The position numbers were made by a program, and so were the translations under genes. A stretch of 64,000 bases of DNA from Convolutriloba macropyga (Eukaryota). The notes beneath the pieces were generated by a model. That model had not been told where the DNA came from. It was given only the letters and a program-made list of their open reading frames with translations, and searched no databases. The stretch lies in assembly GCF_964194025.1 (NCBI RefSeq), contig NC_134480.1, forward strand, positions 23,560,001 through 23,624,000, given 5' to 3'. This document shows positions 1,156 through 64,000 of this stretch, piece after piece (the first letter of the stretch is position 1; each line of letters begins with the position of its first letter).

Positions 1156-4100
1156 TTAGCAAAGCTCATTATATAATATAATAGCAACTTCAATTAACTT
1201 TCTATCATCATTAATGGTTAGTTCTAGAATATTATTAACCAGTAGCTCTTTGTCTCCATCTAATGATGCTTGGCGGATCATTTTTATTAAATCTCTTTTG
1301 AATAGATATAGATTCTCATCATGAGGATAGCTTTTAATATGGTTTACATAAAATCTTTTATCATCAAATGTGTTTAGACTAATCTTACTTGTTTTTGTTG
1401 TTGTCATGTTATCACCAACTTATTGTATTCTACATTCATCTACACTTCTCTCTATGTTATACATTAGTGCATTATAATACTCCTCATGTTTAGCATTGTT
1501 ATAATTCTTTATTCCTTTCTCTTTAGTTTTATTTGGGTAATCTTTAAAGCTATCTGTCTTTGGTGTTAGGGCCACAAACTCTTCTATGATATTACTTCCC
1601 ATTTCATGTTTGAATTTACCAGGAACTTTATTATTTGTTTTGATTGGTCTTTCAAGATTACTTAAATCCATGTGTTCATTGTCGACATTACCCTCGCTAT
1701 AACTTAATACACAACTATCAGTATCCATGTAATGGAGTTGTAGATCTTTGAGAGATGGTTGAAGAATATTATAGAATACATCATACATGTGTAATTTACT
1801 TAATTCTAAGATAGTAACACCTACATATACTGGAGAATCATATTCTATTTTTTTCTTTATATATTCTATTTGGCTATAATCTCTATCTAGTTATATTCTT
1901 AAATGTTGGTTTACTTACACTTTTCATTATCTTTTCTTCATCATGCAAGAACTTGCTTTGAAAGAAGTGTAGAGGATTCATGCACATTCTTCCATATAAT
2001 GAGTTATTCATTAATTTCCTTACATCCTTTTCTGCTTCAGTTTTAGCTGTTGCTCTTTTATTTGTATTGTTTTGTATATAATCGCTACATATATAATCTT
2101 GTTTAAATTTAATTACTCTGTATTTTTGTTACTTTTACTCCCATCTTAACATAGAATTTTAACATCCTATAATGAACCATATATTCTGTTTTGTTGTTTT
2201 GGTCTAAGATTAATTTCTCTGATCGGTGAAGCAGTTTCCCTGATCGGTGAAGCCGCTTCTCGGATCTTGCTTTGACTCCATCTCTTTCTTGATCAGTGAA
2301 ACTGCTCCGCAGATATCCCAATTCATTATCATTTATCTTTCTTTTATTAGGCATTAGTGCTAACTGTTCTGTTCTCTCTTTACATTCATTAGTATAATCA
2401 ATATCACAAACTATATAGTAACCATGATTACTATCATCTGGAGTATTCAATATTGTATCAAGAGTAGTAGTAGTAAACTGGAAGTCCTTATAAGGTAACT
2501 TTTGCATCATTGCATAACCATATAGGTTGTTTGCGTCTATGTACCATATGGTCTTACCATCACTTATCTATATATCTATCACCCATTATGCCGCATATAC
2601 CACCTCTCTTTGCTCCGACAAAATCATCCGGTATTTGTTTATCTTGTAATGTATCTAATGTTACACCGCTTGACATTAACCAACAATCAAAACTATAACC
2701 CGGGAGACTAACGTAATGTAGTGGATTGAGCTTGAATTCTTTCATACTTAGTTTAACATATTCATTCATGCAATAGTCTAATATTTCCACATCATTCTGT
2801 AAATACGCTATAGTTAGATATTTTCCAGTTTTATGGCTGTTGTCTTTATTAAAGATATCGACTTCTTCTTGTATTGGTAATTTATTATGTAGAGAGGATT
2901 TAAAGTCTTCTAATTTTAGATTACCTATAACTTCTTGCTAATCATACAAACGAAACTATTCATATGGATGTAATGTTTTAGTTTTACATCCATATATCTT
3001 TGCCATTTGATCTAGAGGCATAGCTAGGAAGTTATAGCTATCTAAGAATTTGAGACAACCAATGCTAAACATCTTAGATTTACCAGCAGCTAGTGGTATG
3101 TTATCTACTTTTCTTTTATCATTATTCTGTATAAAGAGTTCACTGTATAGTAGTTTGAAGTCATAGACAGAGCCATTATGGAATATTACTGGAATGAAGT
3201 TTTGTTGTTTGTATCTTAGATTACATATTTTACATGCTGGTCCTCTATATTTACCAGTTTCATGACAATGATCTCTTACTTTATTAATACATGTTTTGCT
3301 GCAGATATGACAAGTGTTATTATTTTCGTGATATAATTTATCTTCTTCTGTGAATATCATCATTTCATTATGTTTGAAATTATTCTCAGTTTCTATTTCT
3401 AACAGATCTCCAGCAAATCTTTTGATGCAGCCTAGACCGAAGTAGTGTTTGAAGTTACCTTGCCAAGTGTAACCCACAGCTATTGGAATATGTTCAGCTA
3501 TTACATATTTACAGTCATTAGTTGTTACTTCAACAATGCAACATTCTATATCGGCAGTTATAATATTTTTTTATATTCTGACGTTTGTGTTCATTTATAA
3601 AAGTAATATGTTTTTTCTTAGGACAAACAATCTCTGGTTTGAATGTGTTGTTGCATTCGTGTTTATCATATTTAAGTTGTGAGTTAAACCAATAGGTACA
3701 CCTATCACAATAATAATATTTAATGTTGTTTTTATTTGGTCGTTCTAACAAGGTTTCTATATTTTTTATTAGGGCACAGTGTTCTATTTGACAATTACGC
3801 CAAACTAGTATTCTTACATCTTTTCTATCTTTATTAAAATCATCCACTTGTTTAAACAATTCTATTTTACCATTACCACAAGGTGTGTATACCCAAATCT
3901 TAATATTATACAATTTCTGTGTTCTTATTGTATAAGTAAAATCATCTTCATGTTGTTGTCTTGGTTCAATTAGTTTATCTACATATTTACTTTCTCGAGT
4001 TGCATGGTGTGGGGCGGGATGTAGCCAAGCAGTAATAGTTAGTTGTAAGCAGTTGTATTTATAACTACGTATATTTAATATCGATTTAGAATTTTTGAGA

Positions 4101-4859
4101 TCAGGAGGTAAATCTATATAACTACCAATAGATGCTTTAGTTGGTTCAATGTTTAACTGAATACTTCTTCCAAGAAAATCAAAATCATAACCATAACCTT
4201 CATATATTTCCTTTTCGAAATCTAGCCACCGATTGAAGTCACCATATTCATATATTGCATTTTTATTAATATAATCAGTATTGAAAAAATTTTTTAGTAG
4301 TTTTAACTTCTTCTTTGGTTCTCTTCTTATAATCACATTCAGCCGTGATCTTATATTTAAAACTCTTAACTTTACGAAACTGGTAACAGTTTTTAATTTC
4401 TTCTAAAGAGTAATTAGTTGCTTCATCTATATCTTCAATGTAATTCCCACCTTTATCAGTAATATAAAATTCTCTCATGTTCTGTCTTGAGTTTATATCG
4501 AAGTCTTCTGTGTTTTCTAGATACATGCGATTGTGACTATATGAATGAGTAGTTAGAGCTACTTTACTTCTAAATTCTTCATGACATTCTTTTTATTCAT
4601 ACTCAATTCTGGTGTAGATATCCTCTTCAGTTTTAGTTTTAGGTTTGGTGGCTGGTTTAGTTTTGATAATATAATCATCTTCATCCAAATTCTACACCCT
4701 CTCCGAGATTTCCTCTTCTTCAGACTCAAACATTTTCTCCAATAGTTCCTTATGTTTGAGATCGTATGATTGATGCCTGTATAAAGCCTTCTTTGATTCA
4801 AAGGATAGATTACAGACATCGCAGAAGTTTATGACACTAGTATTAGTTGATTTAGACAT
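1156..4859 (-). pseudogene. polB: Protein-primed DNA polymerase B (pPolB) with N-terminal C2H2 finger and endonuclease VII-like domain; multiple frameshifts and stops
   Basis: Motifs occur in the expected order across broken frames: FCDVCNLSF..H..H; GSYIDLP; VRDHCHETGKYRGPACKICNL (Endo VII-like); IPVIFHNGSVYDF (Exo II); LKFLDSYNF; IWYIDANNLYGYAM (motif A, ~2510-2550); KLMNNSLYGR (motif B, ~1987-2017); YMDTDS (motif C); KVPGKFKHE; KISLNTFDDKR. Confidence 0.93.
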
Positions 4860-39847: not shown

Positions 39848-40507
39848 TTAAGCATCAACTAAAAATTTAACGCTTGAAGCTTGTCCCGAAAGTGCGGTTG
39901 GTGAGGATTCGTCAGAATTGGACTGCTGGACCTGAACTGTAGAACTGTTCTGAGAGACGTCAAAATCCTCTTCAGCTAACATCCAAATCGGCGGCTCGAT
40001 CAAACTCGACTTCATTGGTCTGATGGGAGATCGTGGATTCGTAGAGTTGCCAAGAGCTGATTGTGGTGAAAGTAGGGTAGCGTCGTATTTTTCGGAAAGT
40101 GATTCAAGTTTCAACTTCTGGACTCGTTTCCGGTCCTTTCGTTTGGTTGTTATTTTTGAAAATGGCTTCAGGTTGTTGAATCCAGCGGATCTGAAAGAAA
40201 TGTTTCCTTTAGTATTTACGAGTTTTTATTTCAGTAATACATAAAATTTCAGACTGAATTCACGATTTTTTCACAGTATCGGACCTCTTTACAGAGTTCA
40301 AAAATCATGCAAAATTTTTCAAATATCTATATCGGTATAGGATTTACGTACAAGAATTAATTTCAAGTTTAAAAAGTTTCCAGTAAAATAAAGCTAATAA
40401 TCAGAAAAACAGCGCTAGATTTATTGAATTGGGCAATTAGCAAAAACGCGTGCAGTACCTCTATATTATATACATTCTCCAAATCTAAATTCAGCACCCG
40501 TGTTCAC

Positions 40508-40564
<57 letters not shown>

Positions 40565-42391
40565 GGGGAGGATTGCACAGCGACAGCTTAACTTCTCGGC
40601 TTTCGGAACTTTATTTATAGCTACATTAGTCTCGCTTACATACACGCATTTGCGTTAGCATCATATGTTGAATTTTTTTGATTAATTGCTAATGAGATTG
40701 TGCAACTTTATGGTCCTCTCGTGTAATTTTACATTTTTCCAAGTTCTTTTCACTGACAAAAGTGAAATTCAAAGTGACCCCCTCCCCCCCCCCCCCCCCC
40801 CCCGAGTTTTTAGCTTTGTTAAGAAAGTATTTTTCTTTTTAGAAAGTATTGTCTAGAAAATAAAAGGACCCTTTTAAATAAAATTTCTTTTTGAAGAAAA
40901 AAGCGCTAAAATGGGTTAACACAAAACCATCAAAGAAACAAATCCTAGATCTCTACCCAGGAATTGGTGGCTTTTTGATTGCTGGCTCGGTGTTGTGTCT
41001 TCTCAGAATCCGGAGTCGCTGGACACCACTGGTGTTAACAATGACGTCATTGGTTGCGAGTGGTCTGGAAGCTTTGTTAATGGGTTTGATTTCGATCTCT
41101 TCTTCTGCGTTGTATGCTGTCATACATGAAACGTATCGCGAAGAGTCGTCAAGATATGTGATCTCGTCCACTGAAATTGACAAAAATAAAGCTGAATTAT
41201 TTTGGATAGTACGATGATAAATCTCTACGGCTAACTTCAAAACCTTCGTTTAAGATGGAATAAAACTTATACACTCTATGTCCAGGGGTATAATGGGAAA
41301 CCCCCAATCGCTTTGTAGAGTAACAAGTATTAGCCTCTATTAGCTTCCCAGGTTTACCCAGGTTAAGGTCCCAGACCAAAGTCGCCTCTGATCAAACCGA
41401 TGCAGGCCGAAGTGACCTGTGATCAGACAGACCATCGTGTGCTCAAAACTTTGTAAAAGCTTGAAGTGCGCTCGATATCAGCTCTGATTAGAATACTTCA
41501 GACCAATGCGACCCCTGTCCAGACCATTATTCAGACGTTCGTGCGCTCGAAATTTTCTGTGATTAGACCATCTCTGATCAGACTCTAGCTGATCAGACAA
41601 ACGAATAGCCCCCATCCGACACCACCACAAGAAACTAGAAGGCTGCCAGGGCAGATACTAGGTGGGCTAAATAGCCCCGTTTATCTGTCCTCTCCGAGAT
41701 ACCTTTGATATGTAAGTAATTTCAATTGATATATATTATGAATTATATAATGTATTATGTAATTAATTAAATTGTTCATAATTTTTATGATAAAGGAGAA
41801 ATTTATTCTTTCTTTCTCTCTTTCTTTCTTTAGAATTCAGGTTTTAGTCCTAATTTTCAAGTGTGTTTGAATTGTGGAAATGAAATATGTAAAATTAAAG
41901 TAAGAGTTGACATGCAGTTTCCTGGTCCCAAAATTATCAACTTTCATTTTAAGTTTTTGAATGTTTGGAAAAGTTTTTTTTGCGCAATGCTCTTACGACA
42001 GAGAAATATACCTGCTTTTAGTTCTCAAGCCTCGAGGCAATTATTATATTAAGAGCAATTAAATCAATTTTGCCTCTAAATGCCACTTACAGTTCTCGTA
42101 AATATGAAAAGCCGAGGGATCCAAAATAGTATAGCTATCCTTGCGATCCCGATTTTCCCCTTTCTTCTTGTTCCTCCAGCAGCAGTTCTTAATAAACATG
42201 GCCGCGATCATCACAGCACACAAAACCAAGATGGCCGCCACCGTGATCAAATTGATCTCTTCTTCCTCCATTCCCGATACTTTCATGTAAACTTTCACAT
42301 AACTGTAAGGCTCGTATTTTATTGGCTCGCCGTTGAAAAAGTGCGGATAACGGTTCGGGTCCAGCCCTAGTTGACTCATGTGTGACGTCAT
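39848..42391 (-). CDS. Single-pass (type III-like) transmembrane adaptor-like protein, 285 aa (exons 42391-42091, 41170-40957, 40190-39848)
   Basis: Three ORF-track fragments join in frame: T|gtaagt..tttcag|TG (phase 1) and GG|gtagag..tttcag|A (phase 2); total 858 nt. In-frame stop four codons before the ATG. TM LITVAAILVLCAVMIAAMFI, then KNCCWRNKKK and a Tyr-rich disordered tail. Confidence 0.8.
40509..40570. repeat. (GT)n microsatellite plus poly-G run
   Basis: About 20 GT units followed by about 20 G, directly after the hairpin acccgtgttcacgggt. Confidence 0.9.
41357..41600. mobile_element. Truncated copy of the CCCAGGTTAAGGTCCCAGAC element family
   Basis: Same terminus and CTGATCAGAC subterminal motifs as 48542-50006; lies in intron 1 of the 39848-42391 gene. 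Confidence 0.6.
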
Positions 42392-57980: not shown

Positions 57981-59261
57981 ATGGACCGATACAAATTTTG
58001 CAAAGAAATTCCTCAAAAGAGTTGTTTACAATCATTTTTGTTGTTATCTGTTATTTTGGTGTTGACAACCGTTCTCCTCCATTTTAACAACAATGCAAAC
58101 TTGGGTTCGCTCTTCAAGCAGTACTCATTTCCACAACCTCATGAGTCACCTGTTATATCTTTGGGGCCAGAATGGCCGGATCTGGCGCTGTTCGTGCCCG
58201 TTTTTCCCGCCGGTGAGGCTGAACTGAACCGGGAATTATTGCGGACTTTAAAATTTTTCTGGCCTCGGCACAGTTTGCAACTAATTTTCCTGGCTGATGG
58301 AGAACTGTCGCCTTCTGTGAAAAATGCATTTGCGGATCGAATCAAGAAGGCAATGGAGAATCACACAAAATCTGTCCAAGTGAAGTTCAACTATATTCCA
58401 AAAGTAGTTTATGGCGGCCGTGGTCATGATAGACAACAATTAATAATGTTCTGGGCCGATAATTTCACCAACGCTGAGTATGTGGGGTTTCTTGACGATG
58501 ATACTATGATCACCAATCATGTTTTACTTGAAGACGTTTTTGACGAGAAAGGTCGACCTCATGTCTGGGGCTGTTCTTCAAAAACTTCAGTTAGATACTG
58601 GCTCAACGTTGCAGAGACCAGCAGGTGGACTGATAACTCGAATGTAGAAATAATGCGAACTATGATTTATTTCGCAGTAGTCGTGAAAACTTCTCATTTG
58701 AAAGAAGTTCGTGACAGTGTTTTAAGACATCGCCCAGAGTTTACAAATTTTGACGACTTTTTTAAACGTGGAATCATAGAAAAAGGTCGAGATTTCAGTC
58801 AGTTTAACATAATGCACCAACATTTGTGGAACCTTAAAAGAGATGAATATAACTGGCATCTTCAACCAATTTCGGCGGAAGACAATCACTTTGAACAGAT
58901 AAATGGGACCACCTACCAAATGTTTGTTCCAAAACCACGATACTCGCTGCATCATAGTTCTGACAGCCGTAAGAACAGGCCTGGTTTTGTTGAAGACGTT
59001 CTCAAAAGAGGTTTTTGCTATTCACTCACGAAGTCGGAATTCGAAGCCAATGGTGAACATAGTCAGTTATGTAAGAATGCCAGCTATACATGGGATGTTG
59101 TATCCAAAACTCCTAATATGGACCAATGGAGATTTGCCCATTTGGACTGGCGATGGGATAAGAGGACAGTTAACGAGCATGTGAAGCGAATCGCTCTGAA
59201 TAGTGCTAGATCTGATTGGAATGAAGAAGAAATCAAGAGCATTTTTTTGCGAAAGTTATAA
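57981..59261 (+). CDS. Intronless type II membrane protein, putative GT-A nucleotide-diphospho-sugar transferase (426 aa)
   Basis: Intact ORF; signal anchor FLLLSVILVLTTVLLHF; stem region; beta-strand LALFVPVF; LIFLAD; GHDRQQLIMFWADNFTNAEYVGFLDDD (DxD after a hydrophobic strand); FSQFNIM; late His (SLHH). Confidence 0.85.
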   Translation: MDRYKFCKEIPQKSCLQSFLLLSVILVLTTVLLHFNNNANLGSLFKQYSFPQPHESPVISLGPEWPDLALFVPVFPAGEAELNRELLRTLKFFWPRHSLQLIFLADGELSPSVKNAFADRIKKAMENHTKSVQVKFNYIPKVVYGGRGHDRQQLIMFWADNFTNAEYVGFLDDDTMITNHVLLEDVFDEKGRPHVWGCSSKTSVRYWLNVAETSRWTDNSNVEIMRTMIYFAVVVKTSHLKEVRDSVLRHRPEFTNFDDFFKRGIIEKGRDFSQFNIMHQHLWNLKRDEYNWHLQPISAEDNHFEQINGTTYQMFVPKPRYSLHHSSDSRKNRPGFVEDVLKRGFCYSLTKSEFEANGEHSQLCKNASYTWDVVSKTPNMDQWRFAHLDWRWDKRTVNEHVKRIALNSARSDWNEEEIKSIFLRKL

Positions 59262-61986: not shown

Positions 61987-64000
61987 TCACAACCTCCCTC
62001 CTTTTTTAAGCAAGTTTGTCGGTATAGGTTCTCCAAATCTGTCGGGTTGTTTTCTGTTTCTTGTTGATGTTCGTGAACGGTCTGAGGTTTTGGGTTGTTT
62101 GTGCTCTGCAGATGATGTGGCTACAGAAGCTTCATCTTGAAGTGAAGGTCCAACATCTGTGTTCTGAAGTTGTTGATCTGATTGAGATTTGGTCTCCTCC
62201 ACTGCTGGTTCAGTTTTCACATTGTCCTCGTCTAGTCTCGCAATTTGGTTGTCGCTCACTAGAATACTCCGTGCTGAGTTTTTGGGCTGCATGAAAGATG
62301 TGTTCAAGTCCTTCCTGATGATGAAGGTAGCAAAAACTGTCTTTGTCTTTTCGTTGGCCTTGAACAGAATGGGTTTGCACAAGTGAAAATCTGCTATTGC
62401 TGGTAGTCTCACTCTGCGCCCCAGCAAGAGTTCAACTGGAGTTTTGTCCCTCGTCTTTGAATTGTTGCGATGTGTCATCAGTGCCCTTTGCAGGAATGCT
62501 CCAAATGACACATTAAGGTTGGGACTCCACGCTTGAAGTGCCCGCTTCACTGACTGTACTGCTCTTTCAGCTAGTCCATTAGCTCTTGGATGATAGACGG
62601 TTGATTCCATTTTCTTGATTCCCAGTGATTCACACAACTGTTTAAGGTCAACACTTACAAATTCAGGACCATTATCAGATGATAAAGTTTTTGGTATTCC
62701 GAATCTTGCAAAGATTTGACTAAGATATATTTTCAACTGTTTCTGATGTTCTATTTCCCGCGGGGAAAGCTTCTATCTAACCAAAATCAAAGATATTGCC
62801 TTGGTCCCTAATATAACCCCAGTCCATGTGGAGCCGTTCCCAAACGTCGGCTTTTGGCCACGTAGAGACTGTTTTCCCCAGGCTAGGCCTGTTCATTTGA
62901 CAATTCTTACATTTACTACCAAAGTGTTGAACGTCTTGGGTAATTCCAGGCCACCATGCTATCATTCCGACGGTTGCCTCAGTTGCAATCTTCCTGGGAT
63001 GTGTTTCACGCAATTTTGCCAAAACCAAGTGCCGTAGTTTGGGTGGATTGAAAGGAACAACACCTCTGAAGATGATTCCATTATGAAAAGTAAGTGGATC
63101 TTTCTGTTGTTCGAATCCTTTTTCCGCTTCTGAACATTGTTTCCAATTGCCGCTTTTGATTCGTTTCATTATGTCCTGGAAGAGTGTTTGTTCCAAGTTC
63201 AGTTTCGATTTCTGCTTGGGTCACTAAATCACTCTGAGCGAATTAGATGTTATTGATTGCGAAGCACACTCGATTGTTGTCCAATTCGTCTTCGTCAAAA
63301 TCCATTCTGCTCAAAGCATCTGCAAGGGGTATCTACTCTCCTGGTGTGTACTTCAACTCATAGTCGAAACCCATTAGAGCTATTGCCCATATTGTTATTC
63401 TCGCTGATGCTGTCTTCGGGATCTCCTCGTCTGGTGCAAAGAGTGGTTTGTGGTCAGTCTGTAGGATAAATCGTTTTCCAAGAATAAATTGCGTAAGTTT
63501 TGTGACCACAAACACAATTGCCAGTGCTTCCCGCTCTATTTTCGTGTATTTTCGCTGCGCTGGAGTCAATTTTCTCGATACATATATAACTGGATTTCCT
63601 TCTTGCGAAAGAACCCCGCCAATGGCTTTTTCAAAGGCGTCAGTAGTAACTGTTGCTTCTTTCTGTAGACTATATGGCTGTACTAGTGGGTTAGCTCATA
63701 ATTCATTTTTTATGTCTGCAAAGGCTTTTTGTTGCATTTTGCCCTATGAGAAATCGCTAATTCTCATGTTATTAAGGGTAGCATTTTTGTTGCAAAATCA
63801 GGAATCATTCTTCCGTAAAAATTAGCTAACCCAACAAACGATTCGAGTGGTTTGTTGTTAGTTGGTTCTTTTGCATTTTTTTAAAATTTTTTCAACATGT
63901 TTGGGATCTGGTGCTTTTCCCTCCTTTGAAATGGAGTATCCAGAAAAAGCTAACGCTATCGACTGGTTTTGAGTTAGATTTTTTCTCATTAATAGAAAAA
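61987..64000 (-). mobile_element. Ty3/Gypsy (Mag-like) pol pseudogene: RT end, RNase H and integrase; 3' LTR begins at 61991 and extends leftwards
   Basis: TDAFEKAIGGVLSQ, TPAQRKYTKIEREALAIVF, LQTDHKPL; H-P..WWPGITQDV..CKNCQ, WERLHMDW; FARFGIPKTLSSDNGPEF, YHPRANGLAERAV; PPT AAAAAAGGAGGGAGGT then TGTGATAG. Frameshifted. Confidence 0.93.

What the first reader, a model, noticed from the sequence alone, without database searches (positions are those of the whole stretch)
39848..42391. Hidden three-exon gene encoding a transmembrane adaptor-like protein whose ITAM is completed by splicing
Seen: the spliced 285-aa product has no signal peptide, a ~47-aa N-terminal segment, one TM helix, a juxtamembrane CC plus basic cluster (KNCCWRNKKK), then DSYTILDPSAFHIYEN|LDEITYLDDSSRYVSC. 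YTIL-x7-YENL fits the ITAM consensus YxxL/I-x6-8-YxxL/I, and the final Leu codon (T|TG) spans intron 1, so no raw ORF shows it. The tail also carries YEN (Grb2-SH2 YxN type), RHNTEP (14-3-3 RxxS/TxP) and PPIP (PxxP), with no recognisable folded domain. Established: TM + palmitoylated Cys + Tyr motifs is the layout of vertebrate adaptors such as LAT, PAG and NTAL, and ITAMs recruit Syk/Shark tandem-SH2 kinases. Inference: a lineage-specific, possibly convergent immunoreceptor-style signalling adaptor in an invertebrate.
Basis: partly seen in the sequence, partly recalled or inferred. Interest (0 to 1): 0.75.

Follow-up and report, generated by a model that had tools for sequence, protein, structure and literature searches.

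The report
Acoel orphan membrane protein, unconserved ITAM
The three-exon gene is real and already annotated in the acoel worm Convolutriloba macropyga as an uncharacterised 285-residue single-pass membrane protein, but its immune-receptor-style tyrosine motif is missing in relatives, while serine/threonine motifs are conserved.

Summary
On the minus strand, exons 42391-42091, 41170-40957 and 40190-39848 splice through GT-AG introns into a 285-aa ORF.

The gene is not hidden. The product is identical to RefSeq XP_075260069.1, "uncharacterized protein LOC142351786" of Convolutriloba macropyga (Acoela).

The gene is under purifying selection. A second haplotype differs by 10 synonymous and 2 non-synonymous changes, while the introns are only 89-95% identical. 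Orthologues turned up in three other unnamed species. The phase-1 intron in the T|TG Leu codon is kept in the two orthologues whose junction lies on one contig.

The ITAM is not conserved:
- The nearest relative has YTIG...YENL.
- Two more distant relatives have no tyrosine at either site.
- The motif sits in the most variable, gap-rich stretch near the membrane.
- Shuffled tails produce the pattern 0.8% of the time.

What is conserved:
- an N-terminal YSYVKVY segment
- the TM helix and juxtamembrane NCCW
- R[KR]xS
- a 33-residue core ending LRRHNT(E/D)(P/S)
- EPPIWLLAEEDF near the C-terminus

The best reading is a lineage-restricted N-out/C-in membrane scaffold with a disordered tail, regulated through Ser/Thr sites rather than tyrosines. 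The genome does encode possible phosphotyrosine readers: a Shark-like kinase locus, two Grb2-like adaptors and an SHP2-like phosphatase. A Convolutriloba-specific ITAM therefore remains possible but unlikely. No RNA data could be reached.

The parts
42091..42391 (-). Exon 1. ATG at 42391-42389. Encodes residues 1-100 plus the first base (T) of Leu101. Donor GTAAGT at 42090-42085.
   Evidence: The same exon is found as raw ORF P0001 in another assembly. Orthologous exons are P0002, P0003 and L010.
42251..42391 (-). N-terminal segment (residues 1-47), predicted extracellular, with no Cys. Contains the invariant block PIxYxPYSYVKVYxKxxG; 16 of 47 positions are invariant in 4 species.
42173..42250 (-). 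Single transmembrane helix (residues 48-73 by AlphaFold2; hydrophobic core 49-67). No charged residue inside.
42179..42184 (-). Juxtamembrane Cys70-Cys71 (NCCW), a candidate palmitoylation pair. Kept in 3 of 4 species; the fourth has a single Cys (EQCFY).
   Evidence: Palmitoylation itself is inference.
42134..42145 (-). R83-K-D-S86, a basophilic-kinase type R[KR]xS site. Kept in all 4 species as RKDS, RKDS, RKES and RRES.
42091..42133 (-). ITAM-like pattern Y87-TIL-x7-Y98-EN-(L101). The last two bases of the Leu101 codon lie at 41170-41169. The pattern is strict only in C. macropyga.
41171..42090 (-). Intron 1 (920 nt, phase 1, GT-AG). Carries an about 185-nt dispersed high-copy repeat at roughly 41645-41831.
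   Evidence: The same phase-1 position in a T|TG Leu codon is seen in L006 and L010.
40957..41170 (-). Exon 2 (214 nt): residues 101 (part) to 172 (part). Donor GTAGAG at 40956-40951.
41124..41150 (-). D108-DSSRYVS-C116 block. Y113 is the only tail tyrosine invariant in all 4 species.
40983..41081 (-). Most conserved block (residues 131-163): K-A-S-R-PLATNDVIVNTSGVQRLRILRRHNTEP. 21 of 33 positions are invariant. It ends in L156-RRHN-T161-E-P163, which fits both the LxRxxS/T and RxxTxP patterns.
   Evidence: AlphaFold2 gives only a weak hairpin at 143-145/154-156 with low pLDDT.
40191..40956 (-). Intron 2 (766 nt, phase 2, GT-AG) with poly-G, poly-C and (CA)n tracts. It is absent in the L006 and L007 orthologues, where the coding sequence runs straight through.
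39848..40190 (-). Exon 3 (343 nt): residues 172 (part) to 285, plus the TAA stop at 39850-39848.
39956..40009 (-). Residues 233-250, SSLIEPPIWMLAEEDFDV: a conserved acidic-aromatic motif (EPPIW[LM]LAEEDF). 12 of 18 positions are invariant.
   Evidence: AlphaFold2 places a short helix at 240-243.

Best explanation
This is the protein-coding gene LOC142351786 of the acoel Convolutriloba macropyga. It belongs to a small orphan family seen so far in four species' worth of sequence.

Shown:
- The gene has three exons and is single-copy.
- It evolves under purifying selection.
- It encodes a 285-aa protein with one TM helix. The N flank is acidic and the C flank strongly basic, so the predicted orientation is N-out/C-in.
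- About 47 residues lie outside the membrane and about 210 residues form a cytoplasmic tail with no predicted fold.
- Conservation is concentrated in short islands:
  - PYSYVKVY in the outer segment
  - NCCW at the inner membrane face
  - R[KR]xS
  - DDSRYVS
  - a 33-residue core ending LRRHNT(E/D)(P/S)
  - EPPIWLLAEEDF

Inferred:
- The protein is a membrane-anchored scaffold, probably lipid-anchored a second time through the CC pair.
- Its tail works through short linear motifs.
- The two invariant basophilic sites (S86, T161) are switches for Ser/Thr kinases of the PKA/CaMK/PKD type.
- Phospho-T161 (RHNpTEP) is a plausible 14-3-3 docking site.
- The C-terminal acidic-aromatic motif docks a further partner.

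The ITAM-like YTIL-x7-YENL pattern is a recent, species-level feature of a fast-evolving linker. It is most likely fortuitous.
For: Gene model and identity:
- The spliced ORF has canonical splice sites.
- It is identical to XP_075260069.1.
- The assembly's size and scaffold count match the published C. macropyga assembly.
- The gene is single-copy in the genome.

Selection:
- Against a second haplotype (L009) there are 12 exon differences, 10 synonymous and 2 non-synonymous.
- The introns are 89-95% identical with indels.
- All splice sites are kept.
- The same variants appear in independent DNA runs.

Orthologues:
- L006 gives 39% identity over residues 7-282 at E 3e-50.
- L010, L011 and L012 represent a closer relative.
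- L005 plus L007 represent a fourth species.
- The intron-1 position and phase are conserved in L006 and L010.

Conservation map, invariant positions per segment:
- core 131-163: 21 of 33
- 233-250: 12 of 18
- N-terminal segment: 16 of 47
- ITAM stretch 86-102: 2 of 17, with gaps
- R[KR]xS and LRRHxT occur in 4 of 4 species, RxxTxP in 3 of 4.

Topology and disorder.

No detectable relation to known families:
- Pfam gives only sub-threshold TM-region hits that do not recur in the orthologues.
- A PDB profile search found nothing.
- An exhaustive phmmer search of 1.84 billion representatives found only three clusters.
Against: - No transcript evidence could be obtained here. All runs that hold the locus are genomic DNA.
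- The kinase and 14-3-3 assignments rest on motif patterns only.
- The +2 Pro of the 14-3-3 pattern is lost in one species, which reads RRHNTDS.
- The conserved N-terminal segment suggests that part of the function lies outside the cell or within the membrane. A pure cytoplasmic-scaffold model does not explain that.
- The fourth orthologue (spD) is stitched from two contigs of one sample.
Confidence: 0.6

Rival explanations
1. The tail has newly acquired a working ITAM (YTIL-x7-YENL). A Src-type kinase phosphorylates it, and it recruits the tandem SH2 domains of a Shark/Syk-type kinase, and/or Grb2 through pYEN. That would make the protein a convergent immunoreceptor-style adaptor.
For: - The strict pattern is present, in a cytoplasmic, membrane-proximal, disordered stretch next to a CC pair.
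- It has about 1% chance frequency in this tail's composition.
- Both tyrosines and YENL are also present in the closest relative.
- The genome encodes plausible writers and readers:
  - a Src-like SH3-SH2-kinase
  - two Grb2-like SH3-SH2-SH3 genes
  - an SHP2-like tandem-SH2 phosphatase
  - on chromosome C8, minus strand, the ordered series SH2+ankyrin repeats, a second SH2, and kinase exons whose best natural PDB matches are ZAP-70 and SYK
- ITAM-Shark signalling exists in invertebrates (Draper; PMC6219719, PMC4503800).
Against: - The closest relative has Gly at +3 of the first half-site in all three contigs.
- Two further orthologues lack both tyrosines and part of the stretch.
- This stretch is the least constrained part near the membrane.
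- There is no TM charge or ectodomain Cys for pairing with a ligand-binding receptor.
- The Leu across the intron is conserved independently of the tyrosines.
- One hit at about 1% is expected many times over in a proteome.
Confidence: 0.07
2. Auxiliary subunit of a membrane transporter or channel, with a layout like FXYD or TMIE proteins. The conserved outer segment (PYSYVKVY) and TM helix would bind a partner membrane protein. The phosphorylatable, palmitoylated juxtamembrane tail would tune that partner.
For: - The outer segment is clearly constrained, with 16 of 47 positions invariant, including four tyrosines.
- A TM helix followed by Cys and a basic cluster, with an R[KR]xS site close to the membrane, resembles the phospholemman layout (own knowledge).
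- There are weak TMIE echoes: Pfam E 0.17 for P0003 and an ESM-Atlas feature score of 0.88.
Against: - No FXYD (PF02038) hit at E<=1 in any orthologue, and TMIE is far below its cut-off.
- The tail is about 210 residues with two strongly conserved distal motifs. Small auxiliary subunits lack such tails.
- The Atlas recognition score is low (1738), so those hits are leads only.
Confidence: 0.15
3. Not a functional gene: a chance ORF assembled across fortuitous GT-AG sites, or an annotation artefact.
For: There is no Pfam domain.
Against: - The haplotype comparison gives 10 synonymous against 2 non-synonymous differences, with far more diverged introns.
- Colinear orthologues exist in three other species. 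Two of them lack intron 2, so the exon 2-3 join is read straight through in their DNA.
- The intron position and phase are conserved.
- The independent RefSeq model is identical.
Confidence: 0.02

Closest known systems
Vertebrate transmembrane adaptor proteins (LAT, PAG/Cbp, NTAL/LAB, LIME)
   Same: - No signal peptide, a very short outer segment and one TM helix.
- Juxtamembrane Cys pair next to basic residues.
- Long disordered cytoplasmic tail built from short motifs.
- The ESM-Atlas feature search lists a LIME1 cluster at 0.87, a lead only.
   Different: - No sequence homology.
- Those adaptors are defined by multiple conserved tyrosine motifs. Here only one tail tyrosine (Y113, RYVS) is invariant.
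- The conserved sites here are Ser/Thr-based.
- LAT-type adaptors do not carry ITAMs (own knowledge).
ITAM-bearing signalling chains (DAP12, FcR-gamma, CD3-zeta) and the Drosophila receptor Draper, which signals through Shark
   Same: C. macropyga has a cytoplasmic Yxx[LI]-x7-Yxx[LI]. The genome carries a Shark-like SH2-Ank-SH2-kinase locus.
   Different: - The pattern is not conserved in orthologues.
- No acidic residue in the TM helix.
- No Cys in the outer segment for disulphide dimers in three of four species, including C. macropyga.
- No homology.
- Draper is a large EGF-repeat receptor, not a small adaptor (PMC6219719).
14-3-3 mode-1 phospho-sites (RxxpS/TxP) made by basophilic kinases
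   Same: L156-R-R-H-N-T161-E-P163 fits RxxTxP and [hydrophobic]xRxxS/T. It lies in the most conserved block. The genome has intronless full-length 14-3-3 genes.
   Different: This is pattern-level evidence only. One species has RRHNTDS. The conserved block extends about 25 residues upstream of the site, which is more than a 14-3-3 site needs.
FXYD / phospholemman-type and TMIE-type small single-pass regulators
   Same: An aromatic motif just outside the membrane (P-Y-S-Y here, P-F-x-Y in FXYD, from own knowledge). After the TM helix come Cys, a basic cluster and an R[KR]xS site.
   Different: No Pfam support. The spacing between the motif and the TM helix differs. The tail is six times longer, with additional conserved motifs.

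Membership tests
ITAM signalling subunits (DAP12 / FcR-gamma / CD3-zeta type) | Cytoplasmic Yxx[LI]-x6-8-Yxx[LI] | tested here: met
   YTIL-x7-YENL at residues 87-101 in C. macropyga. Chance frequency is 0.8% in shuffled tails.
ITAM signalling subunits (DAP12 / FcR-gamma / CD3-zeta type) | Both tyrosines, the +3 Leu/Ile and the spacing conserved among orthologues | tested here: not met
   spB has YTIG...YENL in 3 contigs. spC and spD have no Tyr at either site, with gaps in the alignment.
ITAM signalling subunits (DAP12 / FcR-gamma / CD3-zeta type) | Acidic residue in the TM helix for pairing with a receptor chain | tested here: not met
   The hydrophobic core 49-67 (ITVAAILVLCAVMIAAMFI) has no charged residue. 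The same holds in the orthologues.
ITAM signalling subunits (DAP12 / FcR-gamma / CD3-zeta type) | Cys in the outer segment for disulphide-linked dimers | tested here: not met
   No Cys before the TM helix in 3 of 4 species, including C. macropyga.
ITAM signalling subunits (DAP12 / FcR-gamma / CD3-zeta type) | Binding of tandem SH2 domains of a Syk/Shark kinase to the doubly phosphorylated motif | not testable with these tools
   Only the existence of a Shark-like locus was shown.
Transmembrane adaptor proteins (LAT / PAG / NTAL / LIME) | Type III topology: no signal peptide, short outer segment, one TM helix, long cytoplasmic tail | tested here: met
   The topology is predicted from the charge distribution, not measured.
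Transmembrane adaptor proteins (LAT / PAG / NTAL / LIME) | Juxtamembrane Cys motif (palmitoylation) | tested here: inconclusive
   CC is present in 3 of 4 species and a single Cys in the fourth. Acylation is not testable here.
Transmembrane adaptor proteins (LAT / PAG / NTAL / LIME) | Several conserved tyrosine docking motifs (YxN and others) in the tail | tested here: not met
   Of 6 tail tyrosines only Y113 is invariant. YEN is kept in 2 of 4 species.
Transmembrane adaptor proteins (LAT / PAG / NTAL / LIME) | Sequence homology to a named family (Pfam LAT, LIME1 and others) | tested here: not met
   No such Pfam hit at E<=1 for any exon or orthologue.
AJAP1/PIANP (Pfam PF15298) | Score above the Pfam gathering threshold, and recurrence in orthologues | tested here: not met
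   21.8 bits against a cut-off of 27, on the TM region only. Absent from P0002 and P0003.
14-3-3 mode-1 client site | RxxS/TxP in a disordered cytoplasmic region, conserved | tested here: met
   RHNTEP, RHNTEP, RHHTEP in three species and RHNTDS in the fourth. Low pLDDT.
14-3-3 mode-1 client site | Phosphorylation-dependent binding to 14-3-3 | not testable with these tools
   The complex prediction gave no verdict.

The most novel reading that the evidence does not exclude
Convolutriloba has evolved a working ITAM (plus a pYxN Grb2 site) on a pre-existing, acoel-specific membrane scaffold. It couples to the Shark-like kinase found on chromosome C8. This would be an independent, recent origin of immunoreceptor-style tyrosine signalling, in an animal group reported to lack the canonical immune signalling pathways and to live with algal symbionts (PMC12849515).
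Probability: 0.06. Interest if true: 0.7.

Novelty: new variant of a known kind. Interest (0 to 1): 0.25.

Why it matters
As it stands, the finding is mostly a clean-up.

What remains of value is modest but real:
- An orphan family of single-pass membrane proteins, apparently restricted to acoels and a few unnamed relatives.
- A sharply defined set of conserved short motifs (PYSYVKVY outside; NCCW, R[KR]xS, PLATNDVIVNTSGxxRxxILRRHNT and EPPIWLLAEEDF inside) that match no described family.

Acoels are reported to lack the major conserved immune signal-transduction pathways (PMC12849515). Lineage-specific membrane scaffolds are therefore candidates for how these animals signal at the cell surface, including towards their algal symbionts.

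The side result may help anyone mapping tyrosine signalling in Xenacoelomorpha. The genome keeps a Shark-like SH2-Ank-SH2-kinase locus, two Grb2-like genes, an SHP2-like phosphatase, Vav and a Src-type kinase.

Tried and rejected
RNA evidence
- Two run searches, over the whole gene and over exon 3 alone, returned only runs not on record as RNA.
- Laying X1-X4 on the locus showed contigs running unspliced across the exon-intron borders of exons 2 and 3, and no joint at 42091/41170 or 40957/40190. The runs are genomic and say nothing about expression.

Known-family searches
- Pfam on each exon and on four orthologous pieces gave only sub-threshold hits on the TM region (AJAP1_PANP_C, DAG1, EphA2_TM, TMEM100, TIM21, TMIE). 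None recurred between species, so I rejected them as compositional.
- A PDB profile search found nothing meaningful.
- The ESM Atlas gave only generic hits to single-pass membrane proteins, with a low recognition score.
- The AlphaFold2 model is too poor outside the TM helix (mean pLDDT 53.9) for a fold search to mean anything, so I ran none.

More orthologues
- The word-indexed protein searches and the profile search added only fragments of the same four species.
- The JGI metagenome scan returned only a duplicate of L006.
- I could not name the three other species.

14-3-3 docking
- A complex prediction of residues 128-172 with an intronless 14-3-3 from this genome gave 'no verdict' (score 0.07 against a mark of 0.34). 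This is no evidence either way. The peptide is unphosphorylated and disordered, a case the test does not cover.

Other motif readings I considered and dropped because the pattern does not fit
- ITIM: the residue at -2 is D for Y87 and H for Y98.
- PP1 RVxF.
- Calcineurin PxIxIT.
- LIR.
- Clathrin box.
- Acidic dileucine.

Type II topology, with the tail outside and the conserved NTS glycosylated
- Rejected because the C flank is +4 and the N flank is 0 to -3 in all four species.

Full report
**1. The observation**

The minus strand of window 39848-42391 carries three exons:
- 42391-42091 (301 nt)
- 41170-40957 (214 nt)
- 40190-39848 (343 nt)

The donors are GTAAGT and GTAGAG. Both acceptors are pyrimidine-rich ...TTTCAG. 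Joined, the exons give 858 nt and a stop-free 285-aa product.

Intron 1 is phase 1 and splits a Leu codon as T|TG. The unspliced ORF instead ends ...YENCKWHLEAKLI*.

There is one hydrophobic segment, residues 49-67. Its N flank has net charge -3 and its C flank +4. AlphaFold2, run with the small alignment available, gives one confident helix (48-73, pLDDT about 95). Almost everything else is below pLDDT 60, with only a weak hairpin at 143-145/154-156 and a short helix at 240-243.

**2. Whose gene it is**

A 110-aa raw ORF covering exon 1 (P0001) sits in a protein cluster whose other member is XP_075260069.1, [quoted passage not shown].

The window's assembly has 1,175,981,408 bases in 4,694 scaffolds. 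This matches the published chromosomal assembly of this acoel (PMC13650328). The gene is therefore not hidden from annotation. It is single-copy in the genome.

**3. Is it a real coding gene?**

No RNA run could be reached. The runs that hold the locus are genomic. Their contigs cross the exon-intron borders of exons 2 and 3 unspliced, and no joint is seen at the proposed junctions. The genome note states that a poly(A) RNA-seq run exists (ERR13669978), but the tools here do not serve it.

Comparative evidence is strong instead.
- A second copy from another assembly of the same species (L009) is most likely the alternate haplotype. The same variants appear in the DNA runs.
- L009 differs from the window at 12 exon positions, 10 synonymous and 2 non-synonymous.
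- The introns are only 89-95% identical and carry indels.
- All splice sites are intact.

**4. Orthologues**

An exhaustive phmmer search with exon 1 against 1.84 billion representatives found only three clusters. Word-indexed and profile searches added tail fragments. From their contigs I rebuilt three orthologues.

- **spC** (L006, identical to L013)
  - It aligns to residues 7-282 at 39% identity, E 3e-50.
  - It has a short intron at exactly the same T|TG Leu codon.
  - It has no intron 2, so its DNA reads straight across the window's exon 2-3 join.
- **spB** (L010, L011, L012)
  - This is the closest relative.
  - Identity to C. macropyga over exon-sized segments ranges from about 46% in the linker to 85% in the core.
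  - It has five exons, the same T|TG junction and one probable GC-AG intron.
- **spD** (exon 1 on L005, tail on L007, both from the same sample)
  - Both ends of the break are phase 1.
  - No tail exon lies within the 10 kb of L005 searched downstream of exon 1, nor exon 1 in the 9 kb upstream on L007. If the contigs belong to one gene, the intron is long.

None of these species is named in the records I could see.

**5. What is conserved and what is not**

Invariant positions per segment in the four-species alignment:

| Segment | Invariant positions |
|---|---|
| N-terminal 1-47 | 16 of 47, including PYSYVKVY |
| Core 131-163 | 21 of 33 |
| 233-250 (EPPIW[LM]LAEEDF) | 12 of 18 |
| 103-117 (DDSRYVS) | 6 of 15 |
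| ITAM stretch 86-102 | 2 of 17 |

In the ITAM stretch, spC has 3 alignment gaps and spD has 9.

State of each tail tyrosine in C. macropyga, spB, spC and spD:
- Y87: Y, Y, gap, gap
- Y98: Y, Y, gap, F
- Y106: Y, Y, C, Y
- Y113: Y in all four
- Y120 and Y207: C. macropyga only

The first half-site in spB reads YTIG in all three contigs. It therefore fails Yxx[LI] even in the nearest relative.

The junction Leu is kept in spC, where the neighbouring sequence is DLDH|L and has no tyrosine. The split codon is thus an old intron position, unrelated to any ITAM.

Shuffling the 212-residue tail gives the ITAM pattern in 0.8% of trials. Two other nulls give 1.6-2.2%. That is rare for one protein and expected many times over in a proteome.

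Other motif counts:
- CC: 3 of 4 species
- R[KR]xS: 4 of 4
- LRRHxT: 4 of 4
- RxxTxP: 3 of 4
- YxN: 2 of 4
- PPIP: 1 of 4

**6. Known families**

- Pfam gives only sub-threshold hits on the TM region: AJAP1_PANP_C at 21.8 bits against a cut-off of 27, plus DAG1 and EphA2_TM. None recurs in the orthologues.
- A PDB profile search is empty.
- The ESM Atlas returns generic single-pass proteins, including a LIME1 cluster at 0.87, with a low recognition score.

The protein shares the layout of vertebrate transmembrane adaptors but not their conserved tyrosine motifs. It shares one pattern with ITAM chains. It lacks their conserved tyrosines and TM charge, and in three of four species also their outer Cys.

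**7. Are phosphotyrosine readers present?**

The genome has at least 32 SH2 matches. Among them:
- an intronless SHP2-like protein with tandem SH2 domains plus a phosphatase domain
- a Src-like SH3-SH2-kinase, plus Vav and chimaerin
- two Grb2-like SH3-SH2-SH3 genes
- on chromosome C8, minus strand, in order:
  - an exon with SH2 plus ankyrin repeats (15386182-15386970)
  - a second SH2 fragment above the Pfam cut-off (15308632-15308823)
  - tyrosine-kinase exons (15285228-15286348) whose best natural PDB matches are ZAP-70 and SYK

That order is the Shark architecture. Whether the series is one transcript over about 100 kb is not shown. A functional ITAM is therefore biochemically possible here, but possibility is all this check adds.

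**8. Best explanation**

The protein is a lineage-restricted N-out/C-in single-pass membrane protein.
- Its short outer segment is constrained.
- Its long disordered tail carries a few deeply conserved short motifs.
- The conserved phospho-acceptors are Ser86 (RKDS) and Thr161 (LRRHNTEP). Both fit basophilic Ser/Thr kinases, and the second also fits the 14-3-3 mode-1 pattern.

I therefore favour a membrane scaffold switched by Ser/Thr phosphorylation. The CC pair would act as a probable lipid anchor and the C-terminal acidic-aromatic motif as a docking site.

These mechanistic steps are inference from motif patterns. A complex prediction with a 14-3-3 from this genome gave no verdict.

The main rival is an auxiliary subunit of a membrane transporter or channel, which would explain the conserved outer segment.

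**9. Verdict**

- Observation: confirmed.
- Interpretation: partly supported. The gene model, the layout and the RxxTxP site hold. 'Hidden' and the ITAM do not.
- The gene is an already annotated, uncharacterised orphan.
- Interest is low to moderate.

Noticed in passing
window 41645-41831 (inside intron 1): An about 185-nt element is present in very many copies on all chromosomes, up to 99% identical (624 first-look candidates, 40 scored). Depth in the DNA runs reaches thousands here. It looks like a young SINE- or MITE-like dispersed repeat.
   Followed up: partly
window 40540-40600 and 40785-40815 (intron 2): On the gene strand there is a long poly-C tract followed by a (CA)n microsatellite, and a separate poly-G run of about 20 bases. 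Read contigs break at these tracts.
   Followed up: no
G000:C8:15285228-15386970, minus strand (loci L024, L034, L035): A candidate Shark orthologue. An SH2 plus ankyrin-repeat exon, a second SH2 fragment (Pfam 24.5 bits) and Syk/ZAP-70-like kinase exons lie in order over about 100 kb. Whether they form one transcript is not shown.
   Followed up: partly
L008:2028-3890 (G000:C6, minus strand): An intronless 621-aa SHP2/Corkscrew-like gene (two SH2 domains plus a tyrosine phosphatase domain) in a single open frame. Two full-length 14-3-3 genes (L046, L047) are also intronless. Many signalling genes here have very long single exons.
   Followed up: no
L015:2868-3563 and L017:2816-3511: Two 232-aa SH3-SH2-SH3 open frames (Grb2/Drk-like). 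One has a further copy on an unplaced scaffold (C3514).
   Followed up: no
window 2956-3477 (minus strand) and neighbours 1420-4336: An ORF with Endonuclease VII and organellar/viral type-B DNA polymerase hits, consistent with the Polinton noted by the first stage.
   Followed up: no
window 61987-63196 (minus strand): ORFs with an integrase core (rve) and an integrase zinc-binding H2C2 domain: a retrotransposon remnant.
   Followed up: no
window 57981-59261 (+): A 426-aa intact ORF with no Pfam hit at E<=0.01. The first stage flagged it as a possible glycosyltransferase.
   Followed up: no
L010:9748-9850 / 10218: In the closest relative, the intron homologous to the window's intron 2 appears to use a GC-AG donor (A|GCAAGT). 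No GT donor gives the conserved frame.
   Followed up: partly
L005:14372-15810: The contig carrying the spD exon 1 also holds ORFs with Monjiviricetes fusion-glycoprotein hits and a MATH/TRAF-like ORF (precomputed Pfam). This may be an endogenous viral element.
   Followed up: no
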